A stretch of DNA of 64,000 nt from Octopus sinensis. Its lineage: Eukaryota. This document shows, one piece after another, positions 558-35,970 of this stretch. The position numbers and the translations under genes were made by a program. The DNA lies in contig NC_043023.1 in the NCBI RefSeq assembly GCF_006345805.1, forward strand, positions 11,656,001-11,720,000, read 5' to 3'. The first letter of the stretch is position 1. Each line of letters opens with the position of its first letter. The notes below the pieces were generated by a model. It was not told the DNA's origin. It ran no database searches and was given only the letters and a program-made list of their open reading frames with translations.

Positions 558-1410
558 TGATAAAGATTTACTTTAAGGCTGTAACGGTGATAATAATGCT
601 AACAATGATAATGTAAAGAATAGAATTATGTAACCCTCTCGATATTACAGTAATTATTTTTCGAAGCGGGAACCTGACAACAATTAAGAAAATATAATTT
701 GCTCGTCTTAATTAATAACTTCCAAACTGAAATGTTGATCTGTTGTTTAGGAAAACCTACAATCGACTTTTATATGTGATATAAAGGAAATTAATTGGTA
801 AAATGAAAGTAATGTGTCATTATTGATTAGTAAAAGGTGAGGGGAACGGTTGAAGACTACCACATTAATTAATTCTGTTGTGTCATTCTCTTTTAGTGCC
901 TTATTATTTAACACACTCACCGATAGAATTTCCACTTATTTCTTATTTTTGTTTCCCTAAAATTTTCGTTTCGTCTTGCAACCTTTTCAGTAGTTTTGAC
1001 TCTGTCCGTTATTTACACTGTGTTCCCTTTTGTTTGTTTGTGCGGTCGATAAATTAAGTACCAGTTACGAACTGGGTCGATGTAATCGACTTAATCCGTT
1101 TGTCTGCCCTTGTTTGTCCCCTCTGTCTTTAAGCCTCTTGTGGGTAATAACAAAACAGGTATTTCGTCTGCCGCCACGTTCTGAGTTCAGATTCCGCCAA
1201 GGTCGACTTTGCCTTTCATCCTTTCGGGGTCGATAAATTAAGTACCAGTTACGAACTGGGTCGATGTAATTGACTTAATACCTATGTCTTTCCTTGTTTG
1301 TCCCCTCTGTGTTTAGCCCCTTGTGGGTAATAAAGAAACATAAAAATTTCAAATTTTGGCCCAGGGCCAGCAACCTTTCATGTGAGCGAGAAGTGGAATA
1401 TATGGACCCC

Positions 1411-1645
1411 AAGGCGACGAGCTGGCAGAAATGTTAGCACGCCGGGCGAAATGCCTAGCGGTATTTCGTCTGCTGCTACGTTCTGAGTTCAAATTCCGCC
1501 GAGGTCGACTTTACCTTTCATCCTTTCGGGGTCGATAAATTAAGTACCAGTTACGCACTGGGGTCGATGTAATCGACTTAATACGTTTGTCTGTCCTTGT
1601 TTGTCCCCTCTGTGTTTAGCCCCTTCTGGGCAATAAAGAATTAAG
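1411..1645 (+). mobile_element. SINE family S1 (other copies 1045-1340, 8555-8790, 44958-45194 -, 50149-50340, 55795-56030 -)
   Basis: Head aaggcgacgagctggcagaa, core gagttcaaattccgccgaggtcgactttgcctttcatcc; many near-identical copies. Confidence 0.85.
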
Positions 1646-2484
1646 AATATATGGACCCCAGTATTTCCAGAAAGGAATGAAAGGCAAAATCGACCTCTGC
1701 CGTATTTGAACTCAGAACTTTCCGCTGAAGTCGAGATTTGACTTAAATTCTTTTCAGACTGTATAAATAATAACGACGATGATGATGATGATAAGCATTT
1801 TTACTTAAGGCCTGTAATTTGGTTGGGAGGTGTAATTCTATTGTATTAAGACCCCTGCTTCTTATTTTATTGAACTCGAAAGTCTGAAAGGCAAATTGAA
1901 CCTCGGTGGAATTTGAACTTTTAGAGTAAAGTCTGATGAGAGTTACATGTGATATGAAGTAAATAAATAAAAGATTCGGCAGATTAACGTTAATTCAAAA
2001 TCGTTAGATGTTCGTTACATTTAATTACTGCATAATGAGAGAAAAGGTGCCTAATTAATTGTGATAGACTAACTAATTGGTCTGGTATAAGTACATAAAT
2101 GTGCCCCACCGAATTTCTTTCCTACTCACTTTTGGATTGTAATTTTTTAATGAAATTTTCCATGACTATATTTCAGAAGATTTGGCAGATTAACGGTAAA
2201 TCAAAATCATTACATGTGATAGAAAGTAAATAGATAAAAGATTTCGTAGATTAACGGTAATTTAAAATCGATACATGTTCTTTACGTTTAATTACTGCAC
2301 AATAAGAGGAAACTTGCCTAATTAATTCTGATAGAATGACTACAAATCCATCTGGGGTAAGTACTTAAATGTACTCCACCGACTTCGTTTTCTCATCACT
2401 TTCTGAAAAATTGGTGTTTTTAAATGGAATCGCTTAGAGAAGCACTCCAGCATGGCCACAGTCCCTGGGTAAAACAGTAACTGA

Positions 2485-2785
2485 CACTCTGTGTTTTAGT
2501 TTATCCAATCAACTGAAAAGCCTGCTCATGGAATTAACATGCAAATGGCTGAGTATTCCACAGACATGGGGACCCTTGATATAGTCTTCAGGGAGATTCA
2601 GCATGACACGGATGATGAGAAGACTGGCCCTTTGAATTACAGGTGAAACTCATTTTTGACACCTGAGTGGACTGATGCAAAGTGAAATAAAATGGCTTGG
2701 AGACTCATTGCACCACTGTGTATCAAACTCACAACTTTACAATTGTGAGTGAAATACCCTAACCACTAAGCCATGCCACTTCACA
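2485..2785 (-). mobile_element. tRNA-derived SINE, duplicated with unit B at about 9070-9375
   Basis: Minus-strand head tggcttagtgg (A box) and gagtttgatac (B-box-like). Confidence 0.7.
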
Positions 2786-3009
2786 GGTGAAACAAGTGAA
2801 AGGAGAGAAGAGAAAGAAAACAGATGAATAATTAGAGAAATGTGGAAGCGATTCATCTATATACAGAATGTTGTAAAAGTTTCAATGCCTCAATGGATTC
2901 TGACCCATGCAAACGTAGATATTAAATGGATGACAATTGACGTTGTAAAATTGAATTACTCTGTTGTTTAACTATCCACTTTATCTTACTGCCTCTTTTC
3001 CTATTTCAG

Positions 3010-3309
3010 AATATCACATAATGTCAACATAATAGAAATTTCTTCAATCAGATGTGCCTCTGATGTTTTTATTGACTTTCCTTGACTGAAGGACGTCCAT
3101 GTATTAACAAGAAACATTCATCAATACATCAAACTCTTAATATAAATTTGATCTTCGACAAATGATGGGGAAAAATTTCTGGACATTGTATTTAACAACA
3201 ACATTGTTTGTCTTCACTGTCTGGAATGTAGAGGAGATTATCAATTAACAGGTTAATTAACGTTGGATAACTTTACAAAAGATTTGACAGTTTTCATTTT
3301 CTACTTTAG
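3010..3309 (+). other. ZNF-A 5'UTR exon (3010-3251) and 58-nt intron (3252-3309)
   Basis: Acceptor cctatttcag|a, donor cag|gttaat, acceptor ctactttag. Homologous acceptors at 9598, 17788, 27875, 30833, 36260, 40288, 45812 and 62962; equivalent introns at 18032-18089 and 35971-36021. Confidence 0.6.
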
Positions 3310-3442
3310 ACATTAAGTAAAATCACAAATGAAAGAAACATAAGATGAAATTATTCTCTAGAAATAGTGACACAACTAAACACTAACATCCACAGAATTT
3401 TGAAAAACACACTATTATTGTGATATTTATTATTCTCTCATA

Positions 3443-4831
3443 ATGAATAATTTGACTAAACCAAAAGCCCCTGATACAAGAGAGAAGCCATATCATTGTG
3501 ATGTCTGTGGTAAGTCATTCGGTGAAGAAAGAGCCTTAACCAAACACAAATGCATTCATAGAGGAGAGAGATCACATCACTGTGATGTATGTGGTAAATC
3601 ATTCTCTCAAAAGGGTTCTTTGACTTGTCACAAACGTGTTCATACTGGGGAAAAACCACATCATTGTGATATCTGTGGTAAATCATTCTCTCAAAGTGCT
3701 TCTTTGACTTATCACAAACGTATTCATACTGGGGAAAAACCATATCACTGTGATATCTGTGGCAAATTATTTTCTTGGTCTTGTTCCTTGAAATCACACA
3801 AATGTGTTCATACAGGAGAGAAGCCATATCACTGTGATATCTGTGGTAAATCATTCTCTCAAAATGGTCATTTGACTGGTCACAAGCATATTCATACTGA
3901 GGAAAACCCATATCAGTGTGATATTTGTGGTAAATCATTTTCTGATAATAGCACTTTAACTAGTCACAAATATACTCATACAAGAGAGAAACCATATCAC
4001 TGTGATATCTGTGGTAAATCATTCTCTCAAAGGGGAGACTTGTCTAAACACAAACATACACACACAGGAGAGAAGCCATACCCTTGTAATATCTGCGGTA
4101 AATCATTTTCTCGAAATACCACTTTAACTAGTCATAAACGTATTCATACAGGAGAGAAGCCATATCATTGTGATATCTGTGGTAAATCATTCTCTGTAAG
4201 TTGTCATTTGACTAGGCACAGACGTATTCATACAGGTGAGAAGCCATTTCATTGTGATATCTGTGGTAAATCATTTTCAGGTTGTGGTAACTTGGCTTTA
4301 CACAAACGTACACATACAGGAGAGAAGCCATTTCATTGTAAGATCTGTGGTGAATCATTTTCTAGAAATAATTACTTGACTGTTCACAAACGTGTTCATA
4401 CAGGTGAAAAACCATATCAGTGTGATATCTGTGATAAATCATTTTCTGTAAATAGCACTTTAACTAGTCACAAGCGTATTCATACAGGAGAGAAGCCATA
4501 TCAGTGTAATATCTGTGGTAAACCATTCTCTACTAGTAGTATCTTGAATCGGCACATACTTACACATACAGGGGAGAAGCCATATTATTGTGATATCTGT
4601 GGTAAATCATTCAGTCAAAGTGGGGAATTGTCAAGACACAAACGCGTTCATACAGGAGAGAAGCCATATTGTTGTAATATCTGTGGTAGATCATTTTCTG
4701 GAAATAGTGACTTGATTAAACACCAATGTATTCATACAAGAGAGAAGCCATATCATTGTGATATCTGTGGTAAATCATTCTCTCAAAAATGCCTCTTAAA
4801 TACACATGTGAGTATTCATACACAAGTTTGA
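3443..4831 (+). CDS. C2H2 zinc-finger protein A (16 tandem fingers, single coding exon)
   Basis: 462-aa ATG ORF of 16 CxxC-x12-HxxxH repeats with TGEKP(Y/F) linkers; N-terminus MNNLTKPK is shared with its paralogs; no effector domain visible. Confidence 0.93.
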   Translation: MNNLTKPKAPDTREKPYHCDVCGKSFGEERALTKHKCIHRGERSHHCDVCGKSFSQKGSLTCHKRVHTGEKPHHCDICGKSFSQSASLTYHKRIHTGEKPYHCDICGKLFSWSCSLKSHKCVHTGEKPYHCDICGKSFSQNGHLTGHKHIHTEENPYQCDICGKSFSDNSTLTSHKYTHTREKPYHCDICGKSFSQRGDLSKHKHTHTGEKPYPCNICGKSFSRNTTLTSHKRIHTGEKPYHCDICGKSFSVSCHLTRHRRIHTGEKPFHCDICGKSFSGCGNLALHKRTHTGEKPFHCKICGESFSRNNYLTVHKRVHTGEKPYQCDICDKSFSVNSTLTSHKRIHTGEKPYQCNICGKPFSTSSILNRHILTHTGEKPYYCDICGKSFSQSGELSRHKRVHTGEKPYCCNICGRSFSGNSDLIKHQCIHTREKPYHCDICGKSFSQKCLLNTHVSIHTQV

Positions 4832-5341
4832 CATGTCAGTGTCAAAATTTACAACTGGACAAAAATTATGAATATTTTGTCAGATGAAAAACAGGTTATT
4901 CCTCTTAAAGCTTCATATTATCAACTTCAATTTCATCAATGTCTATATGAAATTTATGAATATCAACTTCAACACATGTCATCATCATCATCGTTTAACG
5001 TCTGCTTTCCATGCTAGCATGGGTTGGACGATTTGACTGAGGTCTGGCGAACCAGACCCCAATCTTGATCTGGCAGAGTTTCTACAGCTGGATGCCCTTC
5101 CTAACGCCAACCACTCCGAGAGTGTAGAGGGTGCTTTTACATGCCACCGGCGCGGGGGCTAGTCAGGCGCTACTGGCATGTATATATGTAAATGAAGAGG
5201 ATTGTGCTGAATTTTTTAGGAATTTGTTATGAGAGAATAAATGTATGGGAATAAGGAATAAAATTTGAAAGGGACATTGATTTTGTCTTTGTTGTGTTTT
5301 GATCATCATCATCCTTTTGTCTGTAGGCTTGGGTGGGCAAG

Positions 5342-5637
5342 TGTGACATGAGCTGTCAAGCCAGGGTGCTGTTCCAGATTGCAGACAGATTTGGCTGTAT
5401 ACCCTTAAAATACATGGCATAGATTATAAATATCCCTGTTCAAGTATCATAATAGCATGAAACTAGTAGTAGCCCTTTCAATTGTGTATTTAATTTGATA
5501 TATGTATGTGTGTGTTTGAACATGATATCAGTCTGATAACTAAAATAAATGTATACGAATCTTGTATTTGAAGCATACTTCTGAATGGGGCAGAAGCATG
5601 GACTGCCTTCTGCAGACAAATAAGGAAACTTGAAACT
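5342..5637 (+). repeat. 296-bp direct repeat, left copy (target-site duplication)
   Basis: Matches 6923-7218 with 2 mismatches seen. Confidence 0.95.
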
Positions 5638-6922
5638 GCCAGAGATGGTATCAACTGACATACGTAGCACATAATCAACAACAATGAAGAAAAGAAATGG
5701 GGCGTAGGTGTCTCCCTGCAGTATTCCGGCTTTGATTGAGAAAGATGATGTTTCTCTATCAGGGGTTAAGATGGTTGAAGACGTATCTGTGTAGAGGACC
5801 TTGATGGCAGAAATAATTTTGCCTGGTATCCCATAGAGCTTAAGGATTTCAAACATCTTGTACCTATCTACAGAATCGAACGCTTTAGAGAAGTCTACAA
5901 ATACCATTGCAAGATCGCGATTAAATGCTTTTGATTCTTCAATAAGTCTGCGCAGGCATAGTATCTGGCTCAGCATTGAGCGCCCATGTCTGAATCCATT
6001 TTGGTTCTTTCGGAGCAAAGGTTCAATAAAGGACAAGACGATTTAGGATCAGTTTGTTGTACAGTTTTGCAGCAATTGACATTAGAGATATGCCCCTGTA
6101 GTTGGTGACGAGGGACAAATCGCCTTTTTTGGGTATTGGAATGATTTGAGATTGGTGCCAAATCTTTGGAGCGACAAAGGTAGAAAGTGTGTGATTCTCT
6201 CTCCAATGCCCAGTCTCTTTTACAATCTCTTGAACAGGCCTCAAATTGTGTAGGTCTTTACCTCAATGAGGCCAAAACTGAATACATAAACAAGTGCCTG
6301 TCCAACAGTGATTGCATCATCCACACTCTCAACAGTGCACCTTTAAATATGGTTTCTGATTACAAATACCTTGGGTCATACATATCATCATCTGGAAAAG
6401 ACTTTCTAACTAGAAAGGGTATGGCCTGGTCAGCCTGTAATGACATGCATAAGATCTGGTCATCAAATCTAAGTTGAGACTTCAAACTTGAGATATTCAA
6501 AGCCACAGTCGAACCAATTCTACTATATGGCTCAGAAACCTGGACGTTATCAAAGAAGCTTGAGAGGCGGTTGGATGGAACCTACACTCGCCTCCTTATG
6601 AGAGCTCAAAATCTCTCATGGAAGTGCCATCCAACCAAAATGCAAATATATGGGAAATTACCACCTGTGTCATCTCTTGTGAAAGGTAGGAGAGTCCAGT
6701 TTGCTGGACATTGTTGTAGAGCTGAAAAAGAATTAATTTCTACTCTTCTCCTCTGGAAGCCATCTACTCGCAATACCAGAGGGCGCACACTCCTACCCTG
6801 AGGTAGTCTCCAGGGATACAGGCATCCAGCAACAGGACCTCTGTAATGCTATGATGGACCGTGAAGTCTGGCGTAACATAGTAAATTCCATTGTCTCGAC
6901 CACGGTTGAACAATGATGATCA
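5638..6922 (+). mobile_element. 5'-truncated, 5'-inverted RTE-clade LINE
   Basis: The minus strand about 6190->5638 encodes RT (IIPIPKKGD...NYRGISL...FVDFSKAFDSV...GILQGDT); the plus strand about 6190-6915 encodes the RT C-terminus (YKYLGS...LLYGSETW...VQFAGH) ending in a tgatgat tail. Confidence 0.92.
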
Positions 6923-7218
6923 TGTGACGTGAGCTGTCAAGCCAGGGTGCTGTTCCAGATTGCAGACAGATTTGGCTGTATGCCCTTAAAATACATGGCA
7001 TAGATTATAAATATCCCTGTTCAAGTATCATAATAGCATGAAACTAGTAGTAGCCCTTTCAATTGTGTATTTAATTTGATATATGTATGTGTGTGTTTGA
7101 ACATGATATCAGTCTGATAACTAAAATAAATGTATACGAATCTTGTATTTGAAGCATACTTCTGAATGGGGCAGAAGCATGGACTGCCTTCTGCAGACAA
7201 ATAAGGAAACTTGAAACT
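6923..7218 (+). repeat. 296-bp direct repeat, right copy
   Basis: Matches 5342-5637; a single copy is present at the paralogous site about 11808-12081. Confidence 0.95.
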
Positions 7219-7717
7219 TTTCACATATGCAGCAAAATGGCAAGATAAGACATCAAATGTCAAAATCTTTGAAATATGTGGTATGTCCAGTATCCATAGC
7301 ATACTGATGAGGATTCAGTGCAGATGGGTAGGACATGTTTTACAAGTGAAAAATGACTGCATTATGAAAGTTCTTCGGTGTATCCAACAAAGAACAGCAG
7401 AAATTGTATTCACCTCAATAGACGTCATTGATTTGTTGAAATTGCCGAAATGCAAGAAATTTAACAACAAATAGCTTAGAAACTACAGAAATTTTCTCAA
7501 GAAAGCCAAGAGAAAAAGATGTTATATGTAACAACATTCTACAAGTATACGAAGTTTAAAAGTGGTTATTTACAAAGAAATTATTTATAAAATCTGCCGG
7601 TCAAAGTGAGAAGGTCCCAGGCTTGTTTTTGAGGCTACAGCTCCCAATAAAAATTCAGCTTTTCTGGTGAAAATTTGAAAACTCTTCAAGATGAAGATGT
7701 TCACAGAATGGGATAGT

Positions 7718-7867: not shown

Positions 7868-9867
7868 TGACAAAGATTTACTTTAAGTCTGTAAAGGTGA
7901 TACTACTACTACTACTAATAATAATGTAATAAAAGGATTATGTGAACCTCTTGATCATAAAGTAATTATTTCGAATCGGAATCTTAACAAAATTAGGAAA
8001 ATTATATTTGTTCGTCTTAATTAATAACTTCCAAACTGAAATGTTAATCTGTTGTTTATGGAAACCTATGATCGACTGTTACATGTGATATAAAGGAAAT
8101 TAACGGCTAATAATGATAATGTAAAGAATAGAATTATGTAACCCTCTCGATGTTACAGTAATTATTTTTCGAAGCGGGAACCTGACAACAATTAGGAAAA
8201 TATATTTGCTCATCTTAATAACTTCCTAACTGAAATGTTGATCTGTTGTTTAGGAAAACCTATGATCGACTTTTATATGTGATATAAAGGAAATTAATTG
8301 GTAAAATGAAAGTAATGTGTCATTATTAATTAGTAAAAGGTGAGGGGAACGGTTGAAGACTACCACATTAATTAATTCTGTTGTGTCTGGGAAGAGTCAT
8401 CCTCTTTTAGTGCCTTATTATTTAACACACTCACCGATAAAATTTCCACTTATTATTTTTGTTTCCCTAAAATTTTCGTTTCGTCTTGCAACCTTTTCAA
8501 TAGTTTTGACTCTGTCCGTTATTTACACTGTGTTCCCTTTTGTTTGTTTGTGCGGTCGATAAATTAAGTACCAGTTACGAACTGGGTCGATGTAATCGAC
8601 TTAATCCGTTTGTCTGTCCTCGTTTGTCCCCTCTGTGTTTAATTCTCTTGTGGGTAGTAAAGAAATAGGTATTTCGTCTGCCGTTACGTCCTGGGTTCAA
8701 ATTCCGCCGAGGTCGACTTTGCCTTTCATCCTTTCGGGGTCGATAAGTTAAGTACCAGTTACGAACTGGGTCGATGTCTGTCCTTGTTTGATTTTGATTG
8801 TTAATTGTTTAAATCACTTTCCATTGCTTTCGGGGTTTTTTACACGCGTGACAATTGAATTAATTTAGGCCTTCAAAAGGAAAAGATCCCATTTGATTAC
8901 TGCACAATAAGAGGAAACTTGCCTAATTAATTCTGATAGAATAACTATAAATTCGTCTGGGGTAATTACTTAAATGTACCCCACCGACTTCGTTTCCTCG
9001 TCACTTTCTTAAAAATTGGTATTTTTAAATGAAATCTATAAAAGAAATACTCCAGCATGGCCACAGTAACTGACACTCTGTGTTTTAGTTTAGCCATTCA
9101 ACTGAAAAGCCTGCTCATGGAATTAACATGCAAATGGCTGAGTATTCCACAGACCTGGGGACCCTTGATATAGTCTTCAGGGAGGCACAGCATGACACAG
9201 ATGGTGAGAAGACTGGCCCTTTGAATTACAGGTGAAACTCATTTTTGACACCTGAGTGGACTAATGCAAAGTGAAATAAAATGGCTTGGAGACTCATTGC
9301 ACCACTGTGTATCAAACTCACAACTTTACAATTGTGAGTGAAATACCCTAACCACTAAGCCATGCCACTTCACAGGTGAAACAAGTGAAAGGAGAGAAGA
9401 GAAAGAAAACAGATAAATAATTAGAGAAATGTGGAAGCAATTCATCTATATACAGAATGTTGTAACAGATTCAATGCCTCAATGGATTCTGCCCCATGCA
9501 AACGTAGTTATTAAATGGATGACAATTGATTTCGTAAAATTGAATTACTCTGTTGTTTAACTATCCACTTTATCTTACTGCCTCTTTTCTTATTTCAGGA
9601 TATCACATCGTGTCAACATAAAAGAAATTTCTTCAATCAGATGTGCCTCTGATGTTTTTATTGACTTTCCTTGACTGAAGGACGTCCACGTATTAACAAG
9701 AAACATTCATCAATACATCATACTCTTAATATAAATTTTCTACTTTAGACATTGAGTAAAATCACAAATGAAAGAAACATAACATTAAATTATTCTCTGG
9801 AAATAGTGACACAACTAAACACTAACATCCACAGAATTTTGAAAAACACACTATTATTGTGATATTT

Positions 9868-11445
9868 ATGACAGATTATTCTCTCATAATGAATAATTTG
9901 ACTAAACCAAAAACCTCTGATACAAGAGAGAAGCCATATCATTGTGATGTCTGTGGTAATTCATTCGGTGAAGAAAGAGCCTTAACCAAACACAAATGCA
10001 TTCATAGAGGAGGGAAATCGCACCACTGTGATGTATGTGGTAAATCATTCTCTCAAAGGGGTTCTTTGACTTGTCACAAACGTGTTCATACTGGGGAAAA
10101 ACCACATCATTGTGATATCTGTGGTAAATCATTCTCTCAAAGTGCTTCTTTGACTTATCACAAACGTATTCATACTGGGGAAAAACCATATCACTGTGAT
10201 ATCTGTGGCAAATTATTTTCTGGGTCTGGTCCCTTGAAATCACACAAACGTGTTCATACAGGAGATAAGCCATATCACTGTGATATTTGTGGTAAATCAT
10301 TCTCTCAAAATAATACTTTAACTAGTCACAAACGTATTCATACAGGAGAGAAGCCATTTCATGGTGATATTTGTGATAAATCTTTCACTAGCAGTAGTCA
10401 ATTAATTCATCACAAACGCATTCATACTGGGGAAAAACCACATCACTGTGACATCTGTGGTAAATCATTCTCTCAAAATAGTACTTTAACTAGTCACAAA
10501 CGTATTCATACAGGAGAAAAACCATATCAGTGTGATATCTGTGGTAAATCATTTTCTGAGTCTAGTTACTTGAAAAAACACAAACGTGTTCATACAGGAG
10601 AGAAGCCATATCACTGTAATATTTGTGGTTGGTCATTCTCTCAAAGGAGTGCCTTGACTACACACTCATACACACATACAGTAGATAAGCCATTTCATTG
10701 TAATATCTGTGACAAAGTTTTCACTACCAGTAGTTACTTAATTCGTCACAAACGCATTCATACTGGGGAAAAATCACATCACTGTCATATCTGTGGTAAC
10801 TCATTTTCCACTAAAGAAACTTTAGCTCGTCACAAACGTATTCATACTGGGGAAAAGCCATATCAATGTGATATTTGTGGTAAATCATTTTCTCAAGGTG
10901 GCGACATGCTTAAACACAAACGTACTCATACAGGTGAGAAGCCATATCATTGTGATATTTGTGGTAAATCATTTTCTCAAGGTGGCGACGTGCTTAAACA
11001 CAAACGTACTCATACAGGCGAGAAGCCATATCATTGTAGTATCTGTGGTAAAACATTTTCTGGAAGTAGTGACTTGATTAAACACAAAAGTGTTCATACA
11101 GGAGAGAAGCCATATTATTGTGATATCTGTGGTAAATCATTCTCTACAAATAGCTATTTGATTAGTCACACACGTATTCATACTGAAGAAAACCCATATC
11201 AGTGTGATATTTGTGGTAAATCATTTTCTCACAACATTACTTTAAATAATCACAGACATATTCATACAGGAGAGAAGCCATATCTTTGTAATATCTGTGG
11301 TAAATCGTTTTCTCGAAATAGCAGTTTAACTAATCACAGACGTATTCATACAGGTGAAAGACCATATCATTGCGACATCTGTGGTGAGTCATTCTCTCAA
11401 AAACGCCACTTAGGTACACATATGAATATTCATACACAAGAGTAA
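9868..11445 (+). CDS. C2H2 zinc-finger protein B (18 fingers, finger 6 has Cys->Gly)
   Basis: Open frame; first ATG at 9868 (the track starts at GTG 9859); fingers 1-4 are nearly identical to A. Confidence 0.93.
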   Translation: MTDYSLIMNNLTKPKTSDTREKPYHCDVCGNSFGEERALTKHKCIHRGGKSHHCDVCGKSFSQRGSLTCHKRVHTGEKPHHCDICGKSFSQSASLTYHKRIHTGEKPYHCDICGKLFSGSGPLKSHKRVHTGDKPYHCDICGKSFSQNNTLTSHKRIHTGEKPFHGDICDKSFTSSSQLIHHKRIHTGEKPHHCDICGKSFSQNSTLTSHKRIHTGEKPYQCDICGKSFSESSYLKKHKRVHTGEKPYHCNICGWSFSQRSALTTHSYTHTVDKPFHCNICDKVFTTSSYLIRHKRIHTGEKSHHCHICGNSFSTKETLARHKRIHTGEKPYQCDICGKSFSQGGDMLKHKRTHTGEKPYHCDICGKSFSQGGDVLKHKRTHTGEKPYHCSICGKTFSGSSDLIKHKSVHTGEKPYYCDICGKSFSTNSYLISHTRIHTEENPYQCDICGKSFSHNITLNNHRHIHTGEKPYLCNICGKSFSRNSSLTNHRRIHTGERPYHCDICGESFSQKRHLGTHMNIHTQE

Positions 11446-12084
11446 CCGTATCAGTATCAAAATTACAACAGGACAACAATTATGAATATTTTGTCTGCTA
11501 AAAGACAGGGTTTATCCCTCTTCAAGCTTGACATTATCAACTTCGGTTTCTTGGATGTCAACATGAAATTCATGAATCACAACTTCAATATCACTTATAT
11601 ATTTAAATATATCAACACAGAGATGACTTTGGTTTCTGAAGATGATTGTGCTGGATTTTTGAGGAATTTGTTATGAGAGAATAAAGGAATGGGAATAAGG
11701 AATAAAAGTTTTAAGTGACTTTGATTTTGTCTTTGTTGTGTTTTCATCATCATCATCTAACATCCATTTTTAGCATCCGTCTTCTATACAGGCTTGGATG
11801 GGAAAGTGTGACATGAGCTGTCAAGCCAGAGTGTTTTTCCAGATTTGGCTGTGTACCTTAAGATACATGGTGTATTTTATAAATATGCCTGTTCATGTAT
11901 CATAACAGCATGAAACTAGTGGTAGCTCTCTCGGTTATGTATTTAATTTGATATGTGTGTGTGTGTTTGTGAACACAGTGACAGTCTGGTGACTAAAATA
12001 AGTGTATACTAATCTCGTATTTTGAGTCTGGGGCAGAAGCATGGACTCCCTTTTACAAAGAAATAAAAAAAACTTGAAACTTTC

Positions 12085-12400
12085 CACATGTGCTGTTTGT
12101 GCAACAAAATAGGAAGATAAGACATCAAATGTCAAAACCTTAGAAATATGTGGTATGTCCAGCATCCAAAGCATGTTGATGAGAATTCAGTGCAGATGGT
12201 TAGGACATGCCTTTCAAATGAAAAATGGCTGCATTCAAAAAATTATTCTTTATGGCCAAAAAATGGAGGGATATCATGGCAGAGGAAGACCTGTCCTTAG
12301 GTGTAAGGATGAGCTGAAGCAATCAGTAAAATCTCTAGAGCTTGATTTGACATGTTGGGGAAAGTCATTGCCTGGATCCACTTCCATGGTGTAAAATATC
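12085..12400 (+). mobile_element. Decayed RTE-type LINE 3' fragment (shorter paralog at 7219-7380)
   Basis: RIQCRWLGHAFQM...LYG...RGRPVLRCKDELK resembles the RTE ORF C-terminus. Confidence 0.7.
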
Positions 12401-14025: not shown

Positions 14026-14807
14026 TTACGGCTGAGAGGCCGTCTTCGAGTTTGTTCCACAGACAGCCATATTCCGGTACGAATGGAGGCACTGCAGCAG
14101 CTGGAGTTTGAAGGGGTTACATGGTACAGGCCATAGACAAAGTAGGGTGAAGCCCCCAAATGCGTGTGTGGGACATTCCCAATCACCGATAACAGACGAA
14201 CTGCACACAGAAATGTCGCTGTGGGTAGCTATTAAGTTGGTCTGCAGAGAAGTGCCATCCGGTTAGGTAGGAGAAGGATCTGACAATTTATATCAGTGGT
14301 TCTCAACTCAGGTCCACACAGCCCCATCAGGGTCCTATATAAGATTGAGGGGATTACGCAACAAAATATTATGGAAAACAATAATTATATTTTAAGGGTA
14401 TTCTAAAAAATTTTGCTTTACGAACGTAACTGATATGTACTATGTCATAAATAACAGGGACAATTTCATATGACACTGGAAATAATTGTTGTTGACAACT
14501 ATCAGGACAAATTGGATTCACCTCAAGAGACGTCATTGATTGGTTGAAATTGCCGAAATGCAAGAAATTAAACAACAAATATCTTACAAACTATAGAATT
14601 TTCTCAATAAAGCCAAGAGAAAAAAATGTTTTATAAACACATTCTACCAGTATACGAAGTTTAAAAGTGTTTAGTTACAAAGAAATTATTTTAAAAATCT
14701 GCCGTTCAAACCGAAAATTCCTACGTGAGTACTCTGTGTTAAAATAATCTGGTGTAAATTTGCGAAGTGGTTGTCAGAAAAACACTGAAACGAAATCACC
14801 TGTCAGT

Positions 14808-16246: not shown

Positions 16247-17352
16247 GGTACTACTAGCGAACAGTGCGCACACGCGCATCTGCGCTAGCCTGTTGTGACC
16301 AGTCGATCCTGTAACGACTACCTAGCAAAGTAAATAAAACAGAAAATAAATCATTTTTTTTACCCAAAATAAATCATTTTTCTTAAACAAAGTGGATCTT
16401 TTCCTTTTGAACTGCAGATGTCAACGCAATTTCTAGTTAACTAAACACTTTTAAACCTCATAAACATCATTTTCTCTTGGTTTTATTGAGAAAATTCTAT
16501 AGTTTGTAAGGTATTTCGTCTGAAAATCCGAGCATTTCGGCAATTTTAACCTATCGATTACCTCCATTCAACTAAAATCATTTGCTGCGTCTAAAACTGA
16601 GACAACATCCTGTAACTAACCCTAAATTTTTTTTTCTTAATTGTTAAATTAATTTAATTGTTACGCGTGTAAAAAAAACTAAAGCAATGGAAAATAATTT
16701 AAACAATTAACATACAAAATAATTCTATAATTTTATACACACGCTTTCCATAACACACACTTTCCATATACGTATGGAAAGCGTTTGTATAAAATTATAG
16801 AATTATTTTGTTTGTTAATTGTTTAAATTATTTTCCATTGCTTTAGTTTTTTTTACACACGTAACAATTAAGAAAAAAAAAATTAGGTTTAGGGTTAGTT
16901 ACAGGATGTTGTCTCAGTTTTAGACGCAGCAAAGGATTTTAGCTCAAAAGAGAGCATAGGATTGGTTAAAATGCGAAAAATTAAACAACGTTAAACAAAC
17001 AAATTACAATTTTCTCAAGAAAGCCAAGAGAAAAAAATATTTTATTTTGACACATTCTACCAGTATACAAGGTTTTAAAGTGTTTAGTTAACTAGAAATT
17101 GTGTTGAAATCTGGCCTTCAAAAGGAAAAGATCCAAAAATATTTTATTTTGACACATTCTACCAGTATACGAAGTTTTAAAGTGTTTAGTTAACTAGAAA
17201 TTGTCTGCCGTTCAAAAGGAAAAGATCCATCAAAGTAAATAAAACACAAGTAAATAACACAAAAACACACAAAGTAAGGATCGACTAGTCATGACTAGCT
17301 TGCTGTGGATACGTGAGTACTCGCACCGGGACCACTGTTCTCAAGAAGGACC
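16247..17352. mobile_element. GGTAC-family MITE with an 8-bp TSD, containing a nested element
   Basis: TSD cattaatg at 16239-16246 and 17353-17360. Confidence 0.85.
16394..17228. mobile_element. Nested foldback element with GGATCTTTTC TIRs
   Basis: ggatcttttccttttgaa...ttcaaaaggaaaagatcc; flanks aacaaagt and atcaaagt; internal palindrome 16572-16942; right end duplicated (17134 and 17228). Confidence 0.8.
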
Positions 17353-18198
17353 CATTAATGTTGACCTCTTTTTTATGAGGCATCGGTAGAACAATAAGTT
17401 GACAAAGACTTCTTTTAAGATTATATTAATACTAGTAATGATGATGATGGTCTCAAATTTTGGCAGATAGTCGTTTACATAGAAGTAGGTAGCTCCCGAA
17501 AGGAATGGAAGCCAAAATCGACCTCGGCCGTATAACTCAGGACTTGTTTTTGTATATATATATATGAATGCTGTATTTTATTTTATTTCCGACGTAGGAT
17601 CTTTTTGGTTTGAACAGCAGTTTTTTCTCGCGGTGTCATATGAAATTATCACTCATAATTATGACCCTAGTATCGATCTATTGCATTTCAGTCATATATA
17701 GACATTGAATGAATGACAGTGTTGCAATGTTGAATTACTATGTTTTTTAATGATTCTCTTTATCTTAATGTTTCTTTTCCTATTTCAGAATAACATACCA
17801 TGTTGATGGAAACGAAATTTCTTCATTCAGATGTGCCGATGATATTTTTATTGACTTTCATCAACTAAAAGAAGACCATATATATATATAAGTATAAGGC
17901 ACATTCATCAATACATCAATCTCTTTATGAAAATAAAATCTTTGTGATAAACAATGGGAAAATACTGTATTCAACAGCAACATTTTTTTGTTTTCACTGT
18001 CTGGAATGTACAGGAGATGATCAATTTACAGGTTAATTGAGCTTGGATAACTTTACAAAAGAGTTAACCGTTTACATCTTGTGTTTTAGATATTAAGATC
18101 ACCGATGAAACACAACTTGAAATTATTCTCTGAAAATAGTGATAAAACTGGACACAAACCTTCATAGAAATGAAAAACACGATATCATTGTGACATGT

Positions 18199-19296
18199 AT
18201 GACAAATTATTCTCTTGTAATGAATAATTTAACTAAACCAAAAAACTCTGATACAAAAGAGAAACCATATTCCTGTGATATCTGTGATAAATCATTTTCT
18301 GAAAAGAGTTATTTAACCAGTCACAAACATATTCATGTTGGAGAAAAGCCATATCATTGTGACATCTGTGGTAAATCATTCTCTGGAAATAGTTACTTAA
18401 CTAGTCACAGACGTATTCATACTGGGAAAAAACCATATCAATGTGATATCTGTGGTGAATCATTTTCTGAAAGTAGTAACTTGAAAAGGCACAAACGTAT
18501 TCATACGGGTGAGAAACCATATCATTGTGATGTCTGTGGTAAATCATTTTCTCATTGTGGTAACTTGACTAATCACAAACGTACTCATACAGGAGAGAGG
18601 CCATATCATTGTAAGATCTGTGGTGAATCATTCTCTAGAGATAATAACTTGACTACTCACATACGTATTCATACTGGGGAAAAACCATATCATTGTAATA
18701 TCTGTGGTAAATCATTTTCTGAAAAGAGCACGTTAACACGTCACGAACGTATTCATACTGGGGAAAACCCATATCAGTGTGATATCTGTGGTAAATCATT
18801 TTCTCAAAACGGTGACTTGCCTAAACACAAACGTACTCATACAGGAGAGAAACCATTTTATTGTAATATCTGTGGTAGATCATTTTCTGGAAGTAGTGAT
18901 TTGACAAAACACAAACGTACACATACAGGAGATAAGCCATATCAGTGTGATATCTGTGGTAAATCATTTTCTGAAAGTAGCACTTTAACCTGTCACAAAC
19001 GTATTCATACAGGAGAGAAATTGTATCATTGTAATATCTGTGGTAAATCATTCTCTACAAATAGCTATTTGATTAGTCACACACGTATTCATACTGAAGA
19101 AAACCCATATCAATGTGATATTTGTGGTAAATCATTTTCTCACAACAAGACTTTGAATAATCACAGACGTATTCATACAGGAGAGAAGCCATATCATTGT
19201 TATATTTGTGGTAAATCATTCTCCCAAAGTGGGGTCTTGTCTAAACACAAACGTACACATGCGGGGAAGAAGCCACATGATTGTGATATCTGGTGA
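18199..19296 (+). CDS. C2H2 zinc-finger protein C (12 fingers, ends HDCDIW*)
   Basis: First ATG at 18199 within the track ORF 18139-19296; 12 intact fingers; out-of-frame finger relics follow the stop. Confidence 0.92.
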
Positions 19297-19929
19297 ATCA
19301 TTCTCTAGCAATAGTAACAAACATATTCATACTGGGGAAAAAACCATATCAGTGCCATATCTGTGGTAAACCATTCTCTGCAAATGGCCTCTTAAGTACA
19401 CATGTGAGTATTCATACACAAGTGTAACTGTATCAGTATTAAAATTTATTACACCATGACGACAATTATGAATATTTTGTCTGCTAAAAGACAGGGTTTA
19501 TTCCTCTTCAAGCTTGACATTATCGACTTCAGTTTGTTGGATGTCAACATGAAATTCATGAATCTCAACTTCAATATCACTTATATATCTAAATATATCA
19601 ACACAGAGATGACTTTGGTTTCTGAAGATGATTGTGCTGGATTTTTGAGGAATTTGTTATGAGAGAATAAAGGAATGGGAATAAGGAATAAAAGTTTTAA
19701 GTGACATTGATTTGGTCTTTGTTGTGTTTTCATCATCATCATCCTCTAACATCCATTTTCTTTGCAGACATTAGTGGAAAAGTGTGGCAGGTGATGATTG
19801 TTGTTAAATCCATATATACTTCCTTGGTTTTTCTTTTGCAATAATCCATAATATTCATATGTAAAATCCATTGTATTGTCTTGTATTCCAAATATAATTC
19901 ATATACTTAGTTTAGAAATGTGAAGTTTA

Positions 19930-25838: not shown

Positions 25839-27494
25839 CTATCCTGTATGAACACGTTGGTGCCTAGTCAAATGACTATTACGAGAAAATGATTTACTAC
25901 AGATATCACAACGATATGGCTTCTCTCCTGTATGAATACGCATATGTTTAGTCAAGTCACCATTATAAGAAAATGATTTACTACAGATATCACAACGATA
26001 TGGCTTCTCTCCTGTATGAATACGCTTATGTTTAGTCAAGTCACCATTATAAGAAAATGATTTACTACAGATATCACAATGATATGGCTTCTCTCCTGTA
26101 TGAATACGTTTATGTTTAGTCAAATCACTATTACAAGAAAATGATTTGCCACAGATATCACAACGATATGGCTTCTCTCCTGTATGAACACGTCTATGGA
26201 CAGTCAAGTCACTATTACAAGAAAATGATTTACCACAGATATCACAATGATATGGCTTCTCTCCTGTATGAGTACGTTGGTGCCTAGTCAAATGACTATT
26301 ACGAGAAAATGATTTGTCACAGATATCACAACGATATGGCTTCTCTCCTGTATGAATACGTTTATGTTTAGTCAAGCCACCATTACAAGAAAATGATTTG
26401 CCACAGACATCACAGTGATGTGGTTTCTCTCCTGTATGAATACGTTTATGGACAGTCAAGCTACTATTACAAGAAAATGATTTGCCACAGATATGACAAC
26501 GATATGGCTTCTCTCCTGTATGAATACGCTTATGTTTAGTCAAGTCACTATTACAAGAAAATGATTTACTACAGATATCACAATGACATGGCTTCTCTCC
26601 TGTATGAATACGTTTATGTTTAGTCAAGAGGCTACTATAAGAGAATGATTTACCACAGATATCACAACGATATGGCTTCTCTCCTGTATGAACACGTTTA
26701 TGGACAGTCAAATCACTATTACAAGAAAATGATTTACTACAGATATTACAACATGGCTTCTCTCCTGTATGAATACGTTTATGTTTAGTCAAGAGGCTAC
26801 TATAAGAGAATGATTTACCACAGATATCACAACGATATGGCTTCTCTCCTGTATGAACACGTTTATGGACAGTCAAGCCACTACTACAAGAAAATGATTT
26901 GCCACAGATATCACAACGACATGGCTTCTCTCCTGTATGAATATGTTTATGTTTAGTCAAGTGGCTACTATAAGAGAATGATTTACCACAGATATCACAA
27001 CGATATGGCTTCTCTCCTGTATGAACACGTTTATGGACAGTCAAGCCACCATTACAAGAAAATGATTTGCCACAGATATCACAATGATATGGCTTCTCTC
27101 CAGTATGAATACGTTTATGTCTAGTCAAATCACTATTACAAGAAAATGATTTGCCACAGATATCACAATGATATGGCTTCTCTCCTGTATGAATACGTTT
27201 GTGCCTAGTCAAATGACTATTACGAGAAAATGAATTACCACAAATATCACAGTGATATGGTTTCTCCCCAGTATGAATACGTTTATGTCGAGTTAAATTG
27301 CTATTATCAGAAAATGATTCACCACAGATATTACGACGATATGGCTTCTCTCCTGTATGAACACGTTTGTGAATGGTCAAGTGACTTTTTCCTAAGAATG
27401 ATTTACCACAGATATCACAACGATATGGTTTCTCTCTTGTATCAGAGTTTTTAGGTTCAGTTAAATTATTCATTATGACAGGATAATTTGTCAT
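25839..27494 (-). CDS. C2H2 zinc-finger protein D (19 highly homogenised fingers)
   Basis: First ATG at 27494; near-identical 84-nt repeats; finger 2 has Cys->Arg; ends at TAG where paralogous linkers have GAG. Confidence 0.92.
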
Positions 27495-28204
27495 ATATAT
27501 CACAATAATATTGTTTTTTTCCTTTCTATGAATATGTTTGTGTCCATTTGCATAACTATTTTCAGGGAATAATTTAATGCTAGGTTTCTTTCATCTGTGA
27601 TCTTAATACTTAAATCAACAGGTAAAAATTGTCAACTCGTTTGTAAAGTTATCCAAACTTGTAAAGCAATCACCTCCTCTACATTCCAGACAGTGAAGAC
27701 AAGAAATATATTTCACTGTTGTTTGTCATAGATTATATTTATATAGAAACGTTGATGTATAGATGAAGGCTCCTTATAAATATATCGTCTTCCTTTAGTT
27801 GATGAAAGTTGATAAAAATATCAAAGGCACATCTGAACGAAGTAATTTCTTTTATGTCAACATGATGTGATATTCTGAAATAAAAAAAGAAACAGTAAGA
27901 TAAAGAGGATAGTTAAGTGACATAGTAATTCAACATTGTAAATATTACTACATGAACACTGTCAGCCATTTAATGTCAATGTTTACAGGGGTCAGAGTTC
28001 ATTGAGGCGTTGAAACATTGGTATACCCACACAAGTTTACTACACACTTCACCTTTACGTTTCAGAAAAATGTTTGATTTAAGACTTCATCTTGCACGGC
28101 CGGAATTCCCTTTTCTGGACCAGCTCGCTAGGTAGCCAGCAGTGAAGGTCCCTGTCTTCATGTTGTCTACGATGAGCCCATGGGCAATGCCCTACACATC
28201 ATTA

Positions 28205-33347: not shown

Positions 33348-33726
33348 CTTTGGATGCTGGACATATTACACTTTTCTAAGATTTTCACATCGGATATCTT
33401 ATCTTGCAATTTTGTAGCATATAGAGTGTAAACGGCAATTGTGAAAAGTTTGAATTTTTTTTTCTTTATTTCCCTCTAGAAGATTTGTATACACGTTTTG
33501 TGTACACCTATTTTTGTAATTAGACTGACATCATGTTCACACACACATCAAATTAAATTCAAAACTAAAAGAGCTACTACTGGTTTCATGTTAGCATGAT
33601 ACTTGCAGAGGGATATTTATAAAACACACCATGTATCTTAAGGGCATACAGCCAAATCTGGAGCAGTACTCTGGCTTGACAGCTCTTGTAACACTTTCCC
33701 ACCTGATCCTGGATAGAAAACGTTAA

Positions 33727-34278: not shown

Positions 34279-35970
34279 TCACCAGATATCACAATCATGT
34301 GGCTTGTCTCCTCTATGTGTACGTTTGTGTTTAGACAAGACCCAAGTTTGGAAGAATGATTTACCACAGATATTACAATGATATGGCTTCTCTCCTGTAT
34401 GTGTACGTTTGTGTCTAGACAAGATTCCACTTTGAGAGAATGATTTACCACAGATATAACAATGATATGGCTTCTCTCCTGTATGAATATGTTTGTGATT
34501 ATTTAAAGTACTCTTTTGAGAAAATGATTTACCGCAGATATCACACTGGTATGGATTTTCCCCAGTATGAATGCGTTTGTGACAAGTCAATTGACTATTT
34601 CTAGCGAATGATTTACCACAAATATCACACTGATAAAACTTTTCCCCAGTATGAATACATTTGTGATCAGTCAAATAACTACTTGTTGGGAATGCTTTAT
34701 CACAGATATTGCAATGATATGGCCTCTCTCCAGTATGAACACGTTTGTGACAATTTAAATTGCTACTGTCAGCAAATGATTTACCACAGATATTACAATG
34801 ATATGGCTTCTCTCCTGTATGAATACGTTTGTGTTTAATCAAGTCACTACTTCCAGAAAATGACCTACCACAGATATTACAATGATATGGCTTCTCACCT
34901 GTATGAGTACGTTTGTGTTTAAGCACGTCACCACCTTGAGAGAATGATTTACCACAGATATCACACTGATATGGTTTTTCCCCAGTATGAATACGTTTGT
35001 GACGAGTGACAGTGTTACTTCTGGAAAATGATTTACTGCAGATATCACACTGATATGGATCTTCCCTAGTATGAATGCGTTTGTGATAAGTCAATTGACT
35101 ATTGCTAGCGAACGATTCACCACAGATATCACAATGAAATGGCTTCTCTCCTGTATGTGTGAGCGTGTGTGTAGTCAAGGCACTCCTTTCAGAGAATGAC
35201 CCACCACAAATATCACGGTGATATAGTTTCTCTCCTGTATGAACTCGTTTGTGTGATTTCAAGGGACCAGACTGAGAAAATAATTTATCACAGATATCAC
35301 ACTGATATGGTTTTTCCCTGGTATGAATACGTTTGTGAATAATCAAGCAACTATTGCTAGCAAACGATTTACCACAGATATTACAGTCATATGGCTTTTC
35401 TCCTCTATGTTTACATTTGTGACTACTTAAACTGCTATTTTCAGAAAAATATTTACCACAGAATTTACAATAAAATGGCTTCTCTCCTGTATGGGAGAGT
35501 TTATGTTTAGGCAAGTCACTACTTTGAGAAAATGATTTACCACAGATATCACACTGATACGGTTTTCCCCCAGTATGAATACATTTGTGACAAGTCAATT
35601 CGCTATTTCTAGAGAATGATTTACCACAGATACTACAATGAAGTGGTTTTTCTCCTGTATGAGTAAGTCTGTGCCTAGTCAATTGACTACTTTGAGAGAA
35701 TGATTTACCACAGATATTACAATGACATAGTTTTTCACCAGTATGAATATGTTTGTGCCTAATCAAGAGACTGTTTGCAGAAAATGATCTGCCACAGATA
35801 TTGCAATGATGTGGCCTTTTTGGTTTAGTTAAATCATTCATCGTGAGATAATAATTTTTCATACATAACACAATGGTAGTTCTTTTTGCATTTCTAAGAG
35901 TGTTTGTGTTCAGATGTGTCAGAGAATAGTTTAATGTTATGTTTCTCCAATCAGTGATCTTACTTAACAT
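34279..35970 (-). CDS. C2H2 zinc-finger protein E (18 fingers, ends HDCDIW*)
   Basis: 563-aa ORF; ATG lies directly after a ttttag acceptor at 35971, though the conserved MNDLTKPK Met may be the true start; finger 8 has Cys->Arg. Confidence 0.92.

What the first reader, a model, noticed from the sequence alone, without database searches (positions are those of the whole stretch)
5342..7218. 5'-inverted RTE LINE flanked by a 296-bp target-site duplication, with the empty site visible in the paralogous unit
Seen: 5342-5637 and 6923-7218 are 296-bp direct repeats (2 mismatches) around a 1.28-kb RTE piece. Its upstream RT half is on the minus strand, with its most 3' point next to the left flank. 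The RT C-terminus and tail are on the plus strand, and the catalytic xADD segment is missing at the junction (about 6190). The paralogous region behind ZNF-B (about 11808-12090) has one copy running straight into the sequence found after 7218. Established: this geometry is the twin-priming signature described for mammalian L1, and LINE TSDs are normally under about 30 bp. Inference: an RTE element used twin priming with second-strand nicking about 300 bp away, so LINE insertion itself duplicated host DNA.
Basis: partly seen in the sequence, partly recalled or inferred. Interest (0 to 1): 0.78.

Follow-up and report, generated by a model that had tools for sequence, protein, structure and literature searches.

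The report
Inverted RTE insertion with 296-bp duplication
A dead 1.3-kb fragment of an RTE-type jumping gene sits behind a zinc-finger gene with its front half flipped, and 296 bp of host DNA is duplicated on either side of it; this is a clean, rare example outside mammalian L1 of one insertion event both inverting itself and copying host DNA.

Summary
Positions 5342-5637 and 6923-7218 are an ungapped 296-nt direct repeat with 294/296 matches. It brackets 1,285 bp (5638-6922) made only of RTE-like reverse-transcriptase sequence.

- **Same element.** Both halves match the same relatives equally well (76.7% and 76.5% nt identity to one Tara Oceans element).
- **Inverted half.** It covers residues 248-433 of that relative, and its 3'-most point touches the left repeat.
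- **Direct half.** It runs from about residue 464 to the last residue, through the stop codon. It ends exactly at the family's canonical (ATG/TGA)n terminus, flush against the right repeat.
- **Missing piece.** About 33 codons, including FADD, are absent.
- **Junction.** The two halves overlap by up to about 6-7 nt.
- **Empty site.** Two paralogous zinc-finger units carry a single, uninterrupted copy of the 296-bp segment.

The twin-priming reading is therefore supported, and the duplication is best explained as a product of the same insertion. What the sequence cannot show is how the 296 nt were duplicated. A distant second nick and extension of the reciprocal end give the same product.

Both phenomena are known for human L1, so this is a new member of a known kind. 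It is notable for the RTE clade and for combining an inversion with a very long TSD. It rests on one assembly; no reads or orthologous alleles could be checked.

The parts
5342..5637 (.). Left copy (A1) of the 296-bp duplicated host segment. Its last ~60 nt belong to an older, unrelated LINE remnant.
   Evidence: Ungapped 294/296 match to 6923-7218. Single-copy in paralogous units. Older LINE remnant shown by translation.
5638..6196 (-). Inverted RTE segment covering reverse-transcriptase domains upstream of the catalytic motif (P0001 residues ~248-433). Its 3'-most point abuts A1. There is one frameshift near 6026-6039.
   Evidence: blastn to L001 2636->2080 at 76.7%. tblastn/blastp 84-88% aa identity. 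Pfam RVT_1 E=5.9e-22.
6191..6196 (.). Inversion junction. GTGATT (possibly TGTGATT) can be assigned to either half, so it is candidate microhomology between the two cDNA ends.
   Evidence: The two blastn alignments overlap at 6191-6196. Base-by-base view. The family protein context (NH|TLST and IS-x-SL) is.
6191..6922 (+). Direct RTE segment running from just after the FADD motif to the C-terminus (P0001 ~464-705). In-frame stop at 6475-6477, frameshift near 6791, native stop codon at 6914-6916.
   Evidence: blastn to L001 2732-3463 at 76.5%. blastp 81-83% aa identity reaching the last residue of P0001 and P0002. tblastn segments. Translation.
6911..6922 (+). Canonical 3' terminus of the family, CAATGATGATCA; relatives have CAATGATGATGA. 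The stop codon lies inside the repeat, so there is essentially no 3' UTR.
   Evidence: L001 and L002 both end ...TCGAACAATGATGATGA and then diverge into unrelated flanks.
6923..7218 (.). Right copy (A2) of the duplicated host segment. It continues without a break into the sequence that follows the single copy in the paralogues.
11807..12081 (+). Paralogous unoccupied site (unit B): one copy of the segment, flanked by the L-like and B-like sequence.
   Evidence: Alignment. blastn. 86.7% identity to A1 excluding gaps.
33489..33693 (-). Second paralogous unoccupied site (unit C, minus strand): one copy between the L-like (33864-33744) and B-like (33422-33345) sequence.

Best explanation
One target-primed reverse transcription event of an RTE-like LINE produced the inversion, the internal deletion and the 296-bp host duplication.

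Shown by the sequence:
- The element's canonical 3' terminus is joined directly to the left end of the duplicated segment (right copy).
- An upstream piece of the same element, inverted, is joined by its 3'-most point to the right end of the duplicated segment (left copy).
- The two pieces meet head to head with a few nt of possible overlap.
- About 92-95 nt of the element, including FADD, lies between the two priming points and is absent.

Inferred steps:
1. The element's endonuclease nicked the bottom strand at 5341|5342. That 3'-OH primed on the (UGA)n tail, with 1-2 nt of overlap (T/TG), and copied about 730 nt.
2. A top-strand 3'-OH ending at ...GAAACT (5637) primed internally on the same RNA, about 92-95 nt upstream of where the first cDNA stopped. 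Complementarity was 0-1 nt. It copied about 555 nt.
3. After RNA removal, the two cDNA ends paired through up to ~7 nt and were filled and ligated.
4. Filling both 296-nt single-stranded stretches duplicated the host segment.

How the top-strand end came to lie 296 nt downstream is open. It could be a second cut or a pre-existing nick or gap at that distance. Or a nearby cut could have been followed by DNA-synthesis extension of the reciprocal end before it captured the RNA.

The insert was dead on arrival because it has no catalytic motif. It lies about 500 bp downstream of a C2H2 zinc-finger ORF, in non-coding DNA.
For: - The 296-nt repeat has 294/296 identity and sharp ends.
- Both halves match the same relatives with equal divergence: 76.7% and 76.5% nt to L001, and 86% and 81% aa to P0001.
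- Element coordinates are inverted 2080-2636(-2640) and direct 2732-3463, so the second priming point lies within ~95 nt of the first cDNA's end.
- The 3' end coincides to the base with the terminus of two independent relatives.
- The inverted piece has no 3' tail of its own, so it is not a separate 5'-truncated insertion.
- There is no short TSD at the insert edges (...GAAACT|X|TGTGAC...).
- Two paralogues have L-A-B with one copy and no loss or gain of target bases.
- A1 and A2 differ by 0.7%, against 13% to the paralogue. They also share an 11-nt insertion absent from both paralogues, so the duplication is young and internal to this unit.
- L1 precedents exist: TSDs over 100 bp in HeLa and over 1 kb in NER-deficient cells, and the twin-priming architecture with microhomologies.
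Against: - In L1 assays, 5'-inverted inserts had ordinary 10-17 bp TSDs, and extreme TSDs went with 5'-truncated inserts. 5' inversions were almost confined to human L1 in human cells. The combination seen here is therefore atypical.
- A 296-nt duplex would not melt on its own to free the second primer.
- Microhomology lengths are uncertain because the closest reference is only ~76% identical in DNA.
- The insert carries two frameshifts and a stop, while the flanking repeats differ at only 2 sites. This suggests the template RNA came from an already defective copy.
- None of 81 related metagenomic loci showed an inverted copy, although that sample is biased towards full-length consensus-like contigs.
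- The evidence is a single assembly, with no reads.
Confidence: 0.75

Rival explanations
1. The inversion was not made here. An RNA read through a pre-existing 5'-inverted, dead RTE copy elsewhere was retrotransposed in trans and 5'-truncated at 5638. Only the 296-bp TSD belongs to this event.
For: The insert has two frameshifts and one premature stop, while the flanking repeats differ at only 2 of 296 positions. The template was therefore probably already defective.
Against: The truncation point would have to fall, by coincidence, within ~95 nt (in element coordinates) of the start of the direct half. That is exactly where a second primer is expected. An inverted copy also lacks its own promoter. 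No second copy of this family is present in the 64-kb window.
Confidence: 0.08
2. A repair or replication error, such as microhomology-mediated break-induced replication or end joining, produced a tandem duplication. It captured RTE cDNA or DNA fragments as filler at the duplication junction, without endonuclease-initiated TPRT at this site.
For: Tandem duplications with templated insertions at the junction are a known class. L1-associated small tandem duplications have been attributed to break-induced replication. Microhomology at the left junction is minimal.
Against: The filler ends to the base at the element's canonical 3' terminus. It also has the ordered two-piece architecture of one RNA copied from two primers. 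Random capture would rarely give either.
Confidence: 0.07
3. Assembly artefact: a heterozygous or repeated region was stitched so that one 296-bp segment appears twice around the RTE fragment.
For: Nothing could be checked against reads. The two copies are nearly identical, and the region lies in a cluster of paralogous units.
Against: Both novel junctions, A-to-RTE and RTE tail-to-A, would each need read support. The copies differ at two positions. There are no gaps or Ns. The structure is biologically coherent to the base.
Confidence: 0.05
4. A tandem duplication of the 296-bp segment already existed, and the RTE later inserted exactly at the boundary between the two copies.
For: None specific. 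It gives the same linear order.
Against: It needs a hit on 1 of ~592 positions. It also needs an insertion with neither a TSD nor a deletion of its own, since the edges read ...GAAACT|X|TGTGAC.... Neither paralogue has a tandem copy.
Confidence: 0.02

Closest known systems
Twin-primed (5'-inverted) human L1 insertions (Ostertag & Kazazian 2001, as summarised in PMC2912911)
   Same: - Direct 3' segment with the native tail at the 3' TSD.
- Inverted upstream segment whose 3'-most point is at the 5' TSD.
- A small stretch of the element missing between the two priming points.
- Short overlap where the two cDNAs meet.
- Flanking direct repeats.
   Different: - The element is RTE-like: it has a microsatellite tail, no poly(A) and essentially no 3' UTR.
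- The TSD is 296 bp, against 10-17 bp for inverted L1 inserts in HeLa.
- In cell assays, 5' inversions were almost limited to human L1 in human cells.
L1 insertions with very large TSDs or small tandem duplications (HeLa, NER-deficient cells, cancer and L1-expression clones)
   Same: Host DNA of 100 bp or more is duplicated on both sides of a TPRT insert.
   Different: Those are experimental or somatic L1 events, mostly 5'-truncated and not inverted. This one is a fixed or germline-transmitted RTE-like insert in what is probably an invertebrate genome.
Ordinary RTE-clade insertions (BovB, plant and animal RTEs)
   Same: Microsatellite-like 3' end, and 1-2 nt of overlap between the tail and the first base of the TSD (here T or TG).
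   Different: Typical RTE TSDs are 7-15 bp, most often 10-12. Here the TSD is 296 bp. The T-stretch about 10 nt upstream of the TSD described for some RTE-dependent elements is not present; the nearest TTTT is at -27 to -24.

Membership tests
Twin-primed (5'-inverted) LINE insertion | Sense-oriented 3' segment ending in the element's native 3' terminus, directly abutting the 3' TSD | tested here: met
   Window ...GAACAATGATGATCA|TGTGAC against L001 and L002 ...GAACAATGATGATGA|unrelated flank. The protein alignment reaches the last residue.
Twin-primed (5'-inverted) LINE insertion | Inverted segment taken from the part of the same element just upstream of the direct segment, with its 3'-most point at the 5' TSD | tested here: met
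   Inverted L001 2080-2636 and direct 2732-3463, with a ~92-95 nt gap. This corresponds to P0001 residues 248-433 and 464-705.
Twin-primed (5'-inverted) LINE insertion | Both segments derive from one template (same subfamily) | tested here: met
   The same best relatives and near-equal divergence: 76.7% and 76.5% nt to L001, and 86/81% and 82/83% aa to P0001/P0002. One template molecule cannot be proven.
Twin-primed (5'-inverted) LINE insertion | Microhomology at the inversion junction and at the internal priming site | tested here: inconclusive
   Up to 6-7 nt (GTGATT) can be assigned to either half at 6191-6196. Only 0-1 nt is shared at 5637|5638. The reference is just ~76% identical, so the exact lengths are uncertain.
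Twin-primed (5'-inverted) LINE insertion | Whole insert flanked by a target-site duplication, with the empty site single-copy | tested here: met
   296-nt repeat. Single copy in two paralogous units. An allelic or orthologous empty site was not available.
RTE clade of non-LTR retrotransposons | One ORF of about 1,000 aa encoding an apurinic-type endonuclease followed by reverse transcriptase, in an element of about 3.3 kb | tested here: met
   Seen in the close relative L001, not in the window fragment. Exo_endo_phos ORF at 314-1342 is contiguous with the RVT_1 ORF at 1339-3456, and the element is about 3.4 kb. The expected clade features are from my own knowledge (Malik & Eickbush 1998).
RTE clade of non-LTR retrotransposons | Very short 3' UTR ending in short tandem repeats instead of poly(A) | tested here: met
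   The stop codon at 6914-6916 lies inside the (ATG/TGA) repeat that ends the element.
RTE clade of non-LTR retrotransposons | Phylogenetic placement of the RT within the RTE clade | not tested
   No reference set of named LINE clades was available. The database relatives carry no clade names.

The most novel reading that the evidence does not exclude
RTE-clade elements can twin-prime from a top-strand end hundreds of bases from the first nick. In this genome that may not be a one-off. Insertions into gapped or replicating DNA would then regularly produce 100-bp-plus host duplications. The ~296-nt spacing is close to two nucleosomes or an Okazaki-sized gap. If so, RTE activity would be a systematic source of small segmental duplications in a rapidly expanding zinc-finger gene cluster.
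Probability: 0.1. Interest if true: 0.65.

Novelty: new member of a known kind. Interest (0 to 1): 0.4.

Why it matters
Twin priming and very long TSDs have been characterised almost only for human L1, mostly in cultured or cancer cells. In the one cross-LINE assay I found (PMC4245944), 5' inversions were essentially L1-specific.

A base-perfect natural example in an RTE-like element suggests two things. First, the second-primer reaction is not peculiar to L1 ORF2p. Second, a LINE from another clade can duplicate hundreds of bases of host DNA in the germ line.

It also pairs an inversion with an extreme TSD, a combination not seen among the HeLa L1 inserts summarised in PMC2912911. That bears on how the second primer is freed.

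It remains a single event with no evident functional consequence: the DNA is non-coding and the insert is dead.

Tried and rejected
- **Organism identification.** A homology search with the neighbouring 462-aa zinc-finger ORF gave only generic vertebrate ZNF hits at 60% identity or less, and no self-hit. The source genome is apparently not in the protein collection. Rfam and tRNA scans of the window found nothing.
- **Independent support for the left junction.** An exact-protein look-up of the 198-aa ORF spanning 5637|5638 was not on record. I dropped further junction look-ups because the genome seems absent from the collection.
- **Typical TSD length of this family.** The flanks of L001 and L002 showed no direct repeats. 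These metagenome contigs are barely longer than the element and may be chimeric at their ends.
- **Survey for other inverted copies.** None of 81 related loci has RT hits on both strands. The sample is biased and mostly from distant families, so this sets no useful rate.
- **Other copies in the window.** blastn and tblastn find only this copy.
- **T-stretch target signature for RTE-dependent elements.** It is not present at this site.
- **Literature on twin priming in RTE or other non-L1 clades.** I found nothing beyond PMC4245944. The original twin-priming paper is not held.
- **Two independent, oppositely oriented RTE insertions.** Rejected because the inverted piece has no 3' end of its own and stops within ~95 nt of where the direct piece begins.

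Full report
**1. The observation**

The window holds an ungapped 296-nt direct repeat at 5342-5637 and 6923-7218. It has two mismatches, both A/G (5348/6929 and 5401/6982), and similarity ends abruptly on both sides. The 1,285 bp between the copies (5638-6922) is entirely reverse-transcriptase sequence. It lies on the minus strand up to about 6196 and on the plus strand from about 6191.

**2. What the insert is**

A search with the conceptual translation of both halves found about 1,000 relatives. The best (P0001, 705 aa) comes from a Tara Oceans marine metagenome contig.

That contig, L001, carries an element of about 3.4 kb. An Exo_endo_phos endonuclease ORF runs straight into an RVT_1 ORF. 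The element ends in ...TCGAACAATGATGATGA, with the stop codon inside the repeat. A second relative, L002, ends identically before diverging into unrelated flank.

One endonuclease-plus-RT reading frame, an element of about 3.3 kb, and almost no 3' UTR ending in a short tandem repeat are the hallmarks of the RTE clade as I know them (Malik & Eickbush 1998, own knowledge). I did not place the RT phylogenetically, so 'RTE-like' is the careful label.

**3. Are the two halves one element?**

- The minus-strand half matches P0001 residues 248-433 at 86% aa identity.
- The plus-strand half matches residues 464/467-705 at 81% and reaches the last residue.
- The ranking of relatives is the same for both halves.
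- At DNA level the halves are 76.7% and 76.5% identical to L001.

Equal divergence from the same relatives argues for one source element.

**4. Geometry**

In L001 coordinates the inverted piece covers 2080-2636 (to about 2640) and the direct piece covers 2732-3463.

- The 3'-most point of the inverted piece touches the left repeat at 5638.
- Its 5'-most point meets the 5' end of the direct piece near 6191-6196.
- The direct piece ends at the canonical family terminus at 6922, flush with the right repeat.
- Residues 434-466 are absent. That is about 92-95 nt and includes FADD.

This gap lies between the two priming points, not physically at the 6190 junction.

GTGATT (perhaps TGTGATT) at 6191-6196 can be read as part of either half, so up to about 7 nt of microhomology is possible there. 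At 5637|5638 there is at most 1 nt. Because the reference is only ~76% identical, these lengths are provisional.

The inverted piece has no tail of its own, so it is not a second independent 5'-truncated insertion. Its end also falls within ~95 nt of the start of the direct piece along a 3.4-kb element. For unrelated fragments I estimate that at roughly a 6% coincidence (my own estimate: a window of about 200 nt out of 3,400).

**5. The empty site**

The region lies behind a C2H2 zinc-finger ORF (3443-4831), one of several paralogous units in the window. Two other units carry a single copy of the 296-bp segment: unit B at 11807-12081 and unit C at 33693-33489 on the minus strand. In both, the copy runs continuously from the sequence found left of 5342 into the sequence found right of 7218. 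No target bases are lost or added.

The two copies in unit A differ by 0.7%, while each differs from unit B by about 13% excluding gaps. They also share an 11-nt insertion that both paralogues lack. The duplication is therefore young and arose within this unit.

This evidence is paralogous, not allelic. A pre-existing tandem duplication cannot be formally excluded, but that scenario makes two demands. The RTE would have to land on exactly 1 of ~592 positions, and it would have to do so with no TSD or deletion of its own. The insert edges read ...GAAACT|insert|TGTGAC... with no short repeat.

**6. Mechanism**

The best-supported account is a single TPRT event with two primers.

1. The bottom-strand nick at 5341|5342 is inferred from the tail-to-TSD junction, with 1-2 nt (T/TG) of overlap with the (UGA)n tail. 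That agrees with what is reported for RTE-clade elements.
2. A top-strand 3' end at 5637 primed internally on the same RNA.
3. The two cDNAs joined through short homology.
4. Fill-in of two 296-nt single-stranded stretches duplicated the host segment.

The junctions are shown by the sequence. The order of events, and above all the origin of the top-strand end, are inferred. The two break sites do look alike on their own strands (ACA|CTT and ACT|TTT), but n=2 proves nothing.

For L1, long TSDs have been explained in two ways. One is use of a distant nick when flap processing fails. [quoted passage not shown] Both give the same final sequence.

**7. Comparison with what is known**

- RTE TSDs are normally 7-15 bp.
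- L1 TSDs over 100 bp occur in under 10% of HeLa inserts and in most inserts in NER-deficient cells, some exceeding 1 kb.
- Small tandem duplications at L1 inserts are regarded as large TSDs.
- In a cross-LINE assay, 5' inversions appeared almost only with human L1 in human cells: one Nimb-2_DR case and none for ZfL2-1.
- In HeLa, all 17 inverted L1 inserts had 10-17 bp TSDs, while extreme TSDs accompanied 5'-truncated inserts.

Each component is therefore known. An RTE-like element showing both together is not something I could find reported in the held literature.

**8. Weak points**

- The evidence is a single assembly with no read support.
- The source genome seems absent from the searchable collections, so no independent assembly or allele could be examined.
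- The insert carries two frameshifts and a premature stop, while its flanks differ at two sites. The template RNA probably came from a defective copy. That leaves some room for remobilisation of an already inverted copy.
- None of 81 related metagenomic loci shows an inverted copy, but that sample is biased.

**9. Verdict**

The finding is a new member of a known kind, of moderate interest to specialists in LINE integration. It has no evident functional consequence for the host locus.

Noticed in passing
window 3443-4831(+), 9859-11445(+), 18139-19296(+), 25839-27503(-), 34279-35970(-): There is a cluster of paralogous C2H2 zinc-finger ORFs with 84-nt (28-codon) finger periodicity, in both orientations. 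Each is followed by a conserved ~120-bp downstream block, with L-like copies at 5193-5313, 11637-11757, 19623-19745, 25408-25294 and 33864-33744. Only three units keep the 296-bp segment.
   Followed up: partly
window 5578-5637 + 7219-7400, and 12020-12330: An older, unrelated LINE remnant (RT C-terminal region, ...AEAWT...KLETFH...LMRIQCRW(V/L)GH...) spans the right end of the duplicated segment and the downstream flank in both units. It therefore predates the unit duplication. The second break of the RTE event fell inside it.
   Followed up: partly
window 5348/6929 and 5401/6982: The only two differences between the 296-bp copies are A/G transitions. Both lie within the first 60 nt, next to the RTE tail in the right copy. 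At the first site the left copy keeps the base shared by both paralogues. This could be chance or error-prone fill-in synthesis.
   Followed up: no
window 5303-5316; unit C around 33760-33730 (minus strand): A (CAT)n microsatellite lies just upstream of the target site and is expanded in unit C. It is the reverse complement of the (ATG)n repeat that ends the RTE family, about 26 nt from the first nick. I did not test whether this influenced target choice.
   Followed up: no
window 7912-8297; 8554-8593 and 8738-8777: There is a two-copy tandem repeat of 194 bp (83% match). A further pair of 40-nt repeats, 184 bp apart, lies just downstream of the insertion locus.
   Followed up: no
window 7387-7617, 14495-14710, 28426-28205, 16969-17134, 16568-16459: An interspersed repeat of about 220 bp occurs in at least five copies (75-88% identity) in both orientations within the window. 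It is unclassified.
   Followed up: no
L001 29-96 and L002 81-148: The 5' ends of the two closest RTE relatives share a well-conserved ~68-nt leader (91% identity) beginning GGGGTAGATGG(A/G)GCTCCTTAGCC. This is far better conserved than the following coding region (~70%). It may be a promoter or a structured 5' UTR.
   Followed up: no
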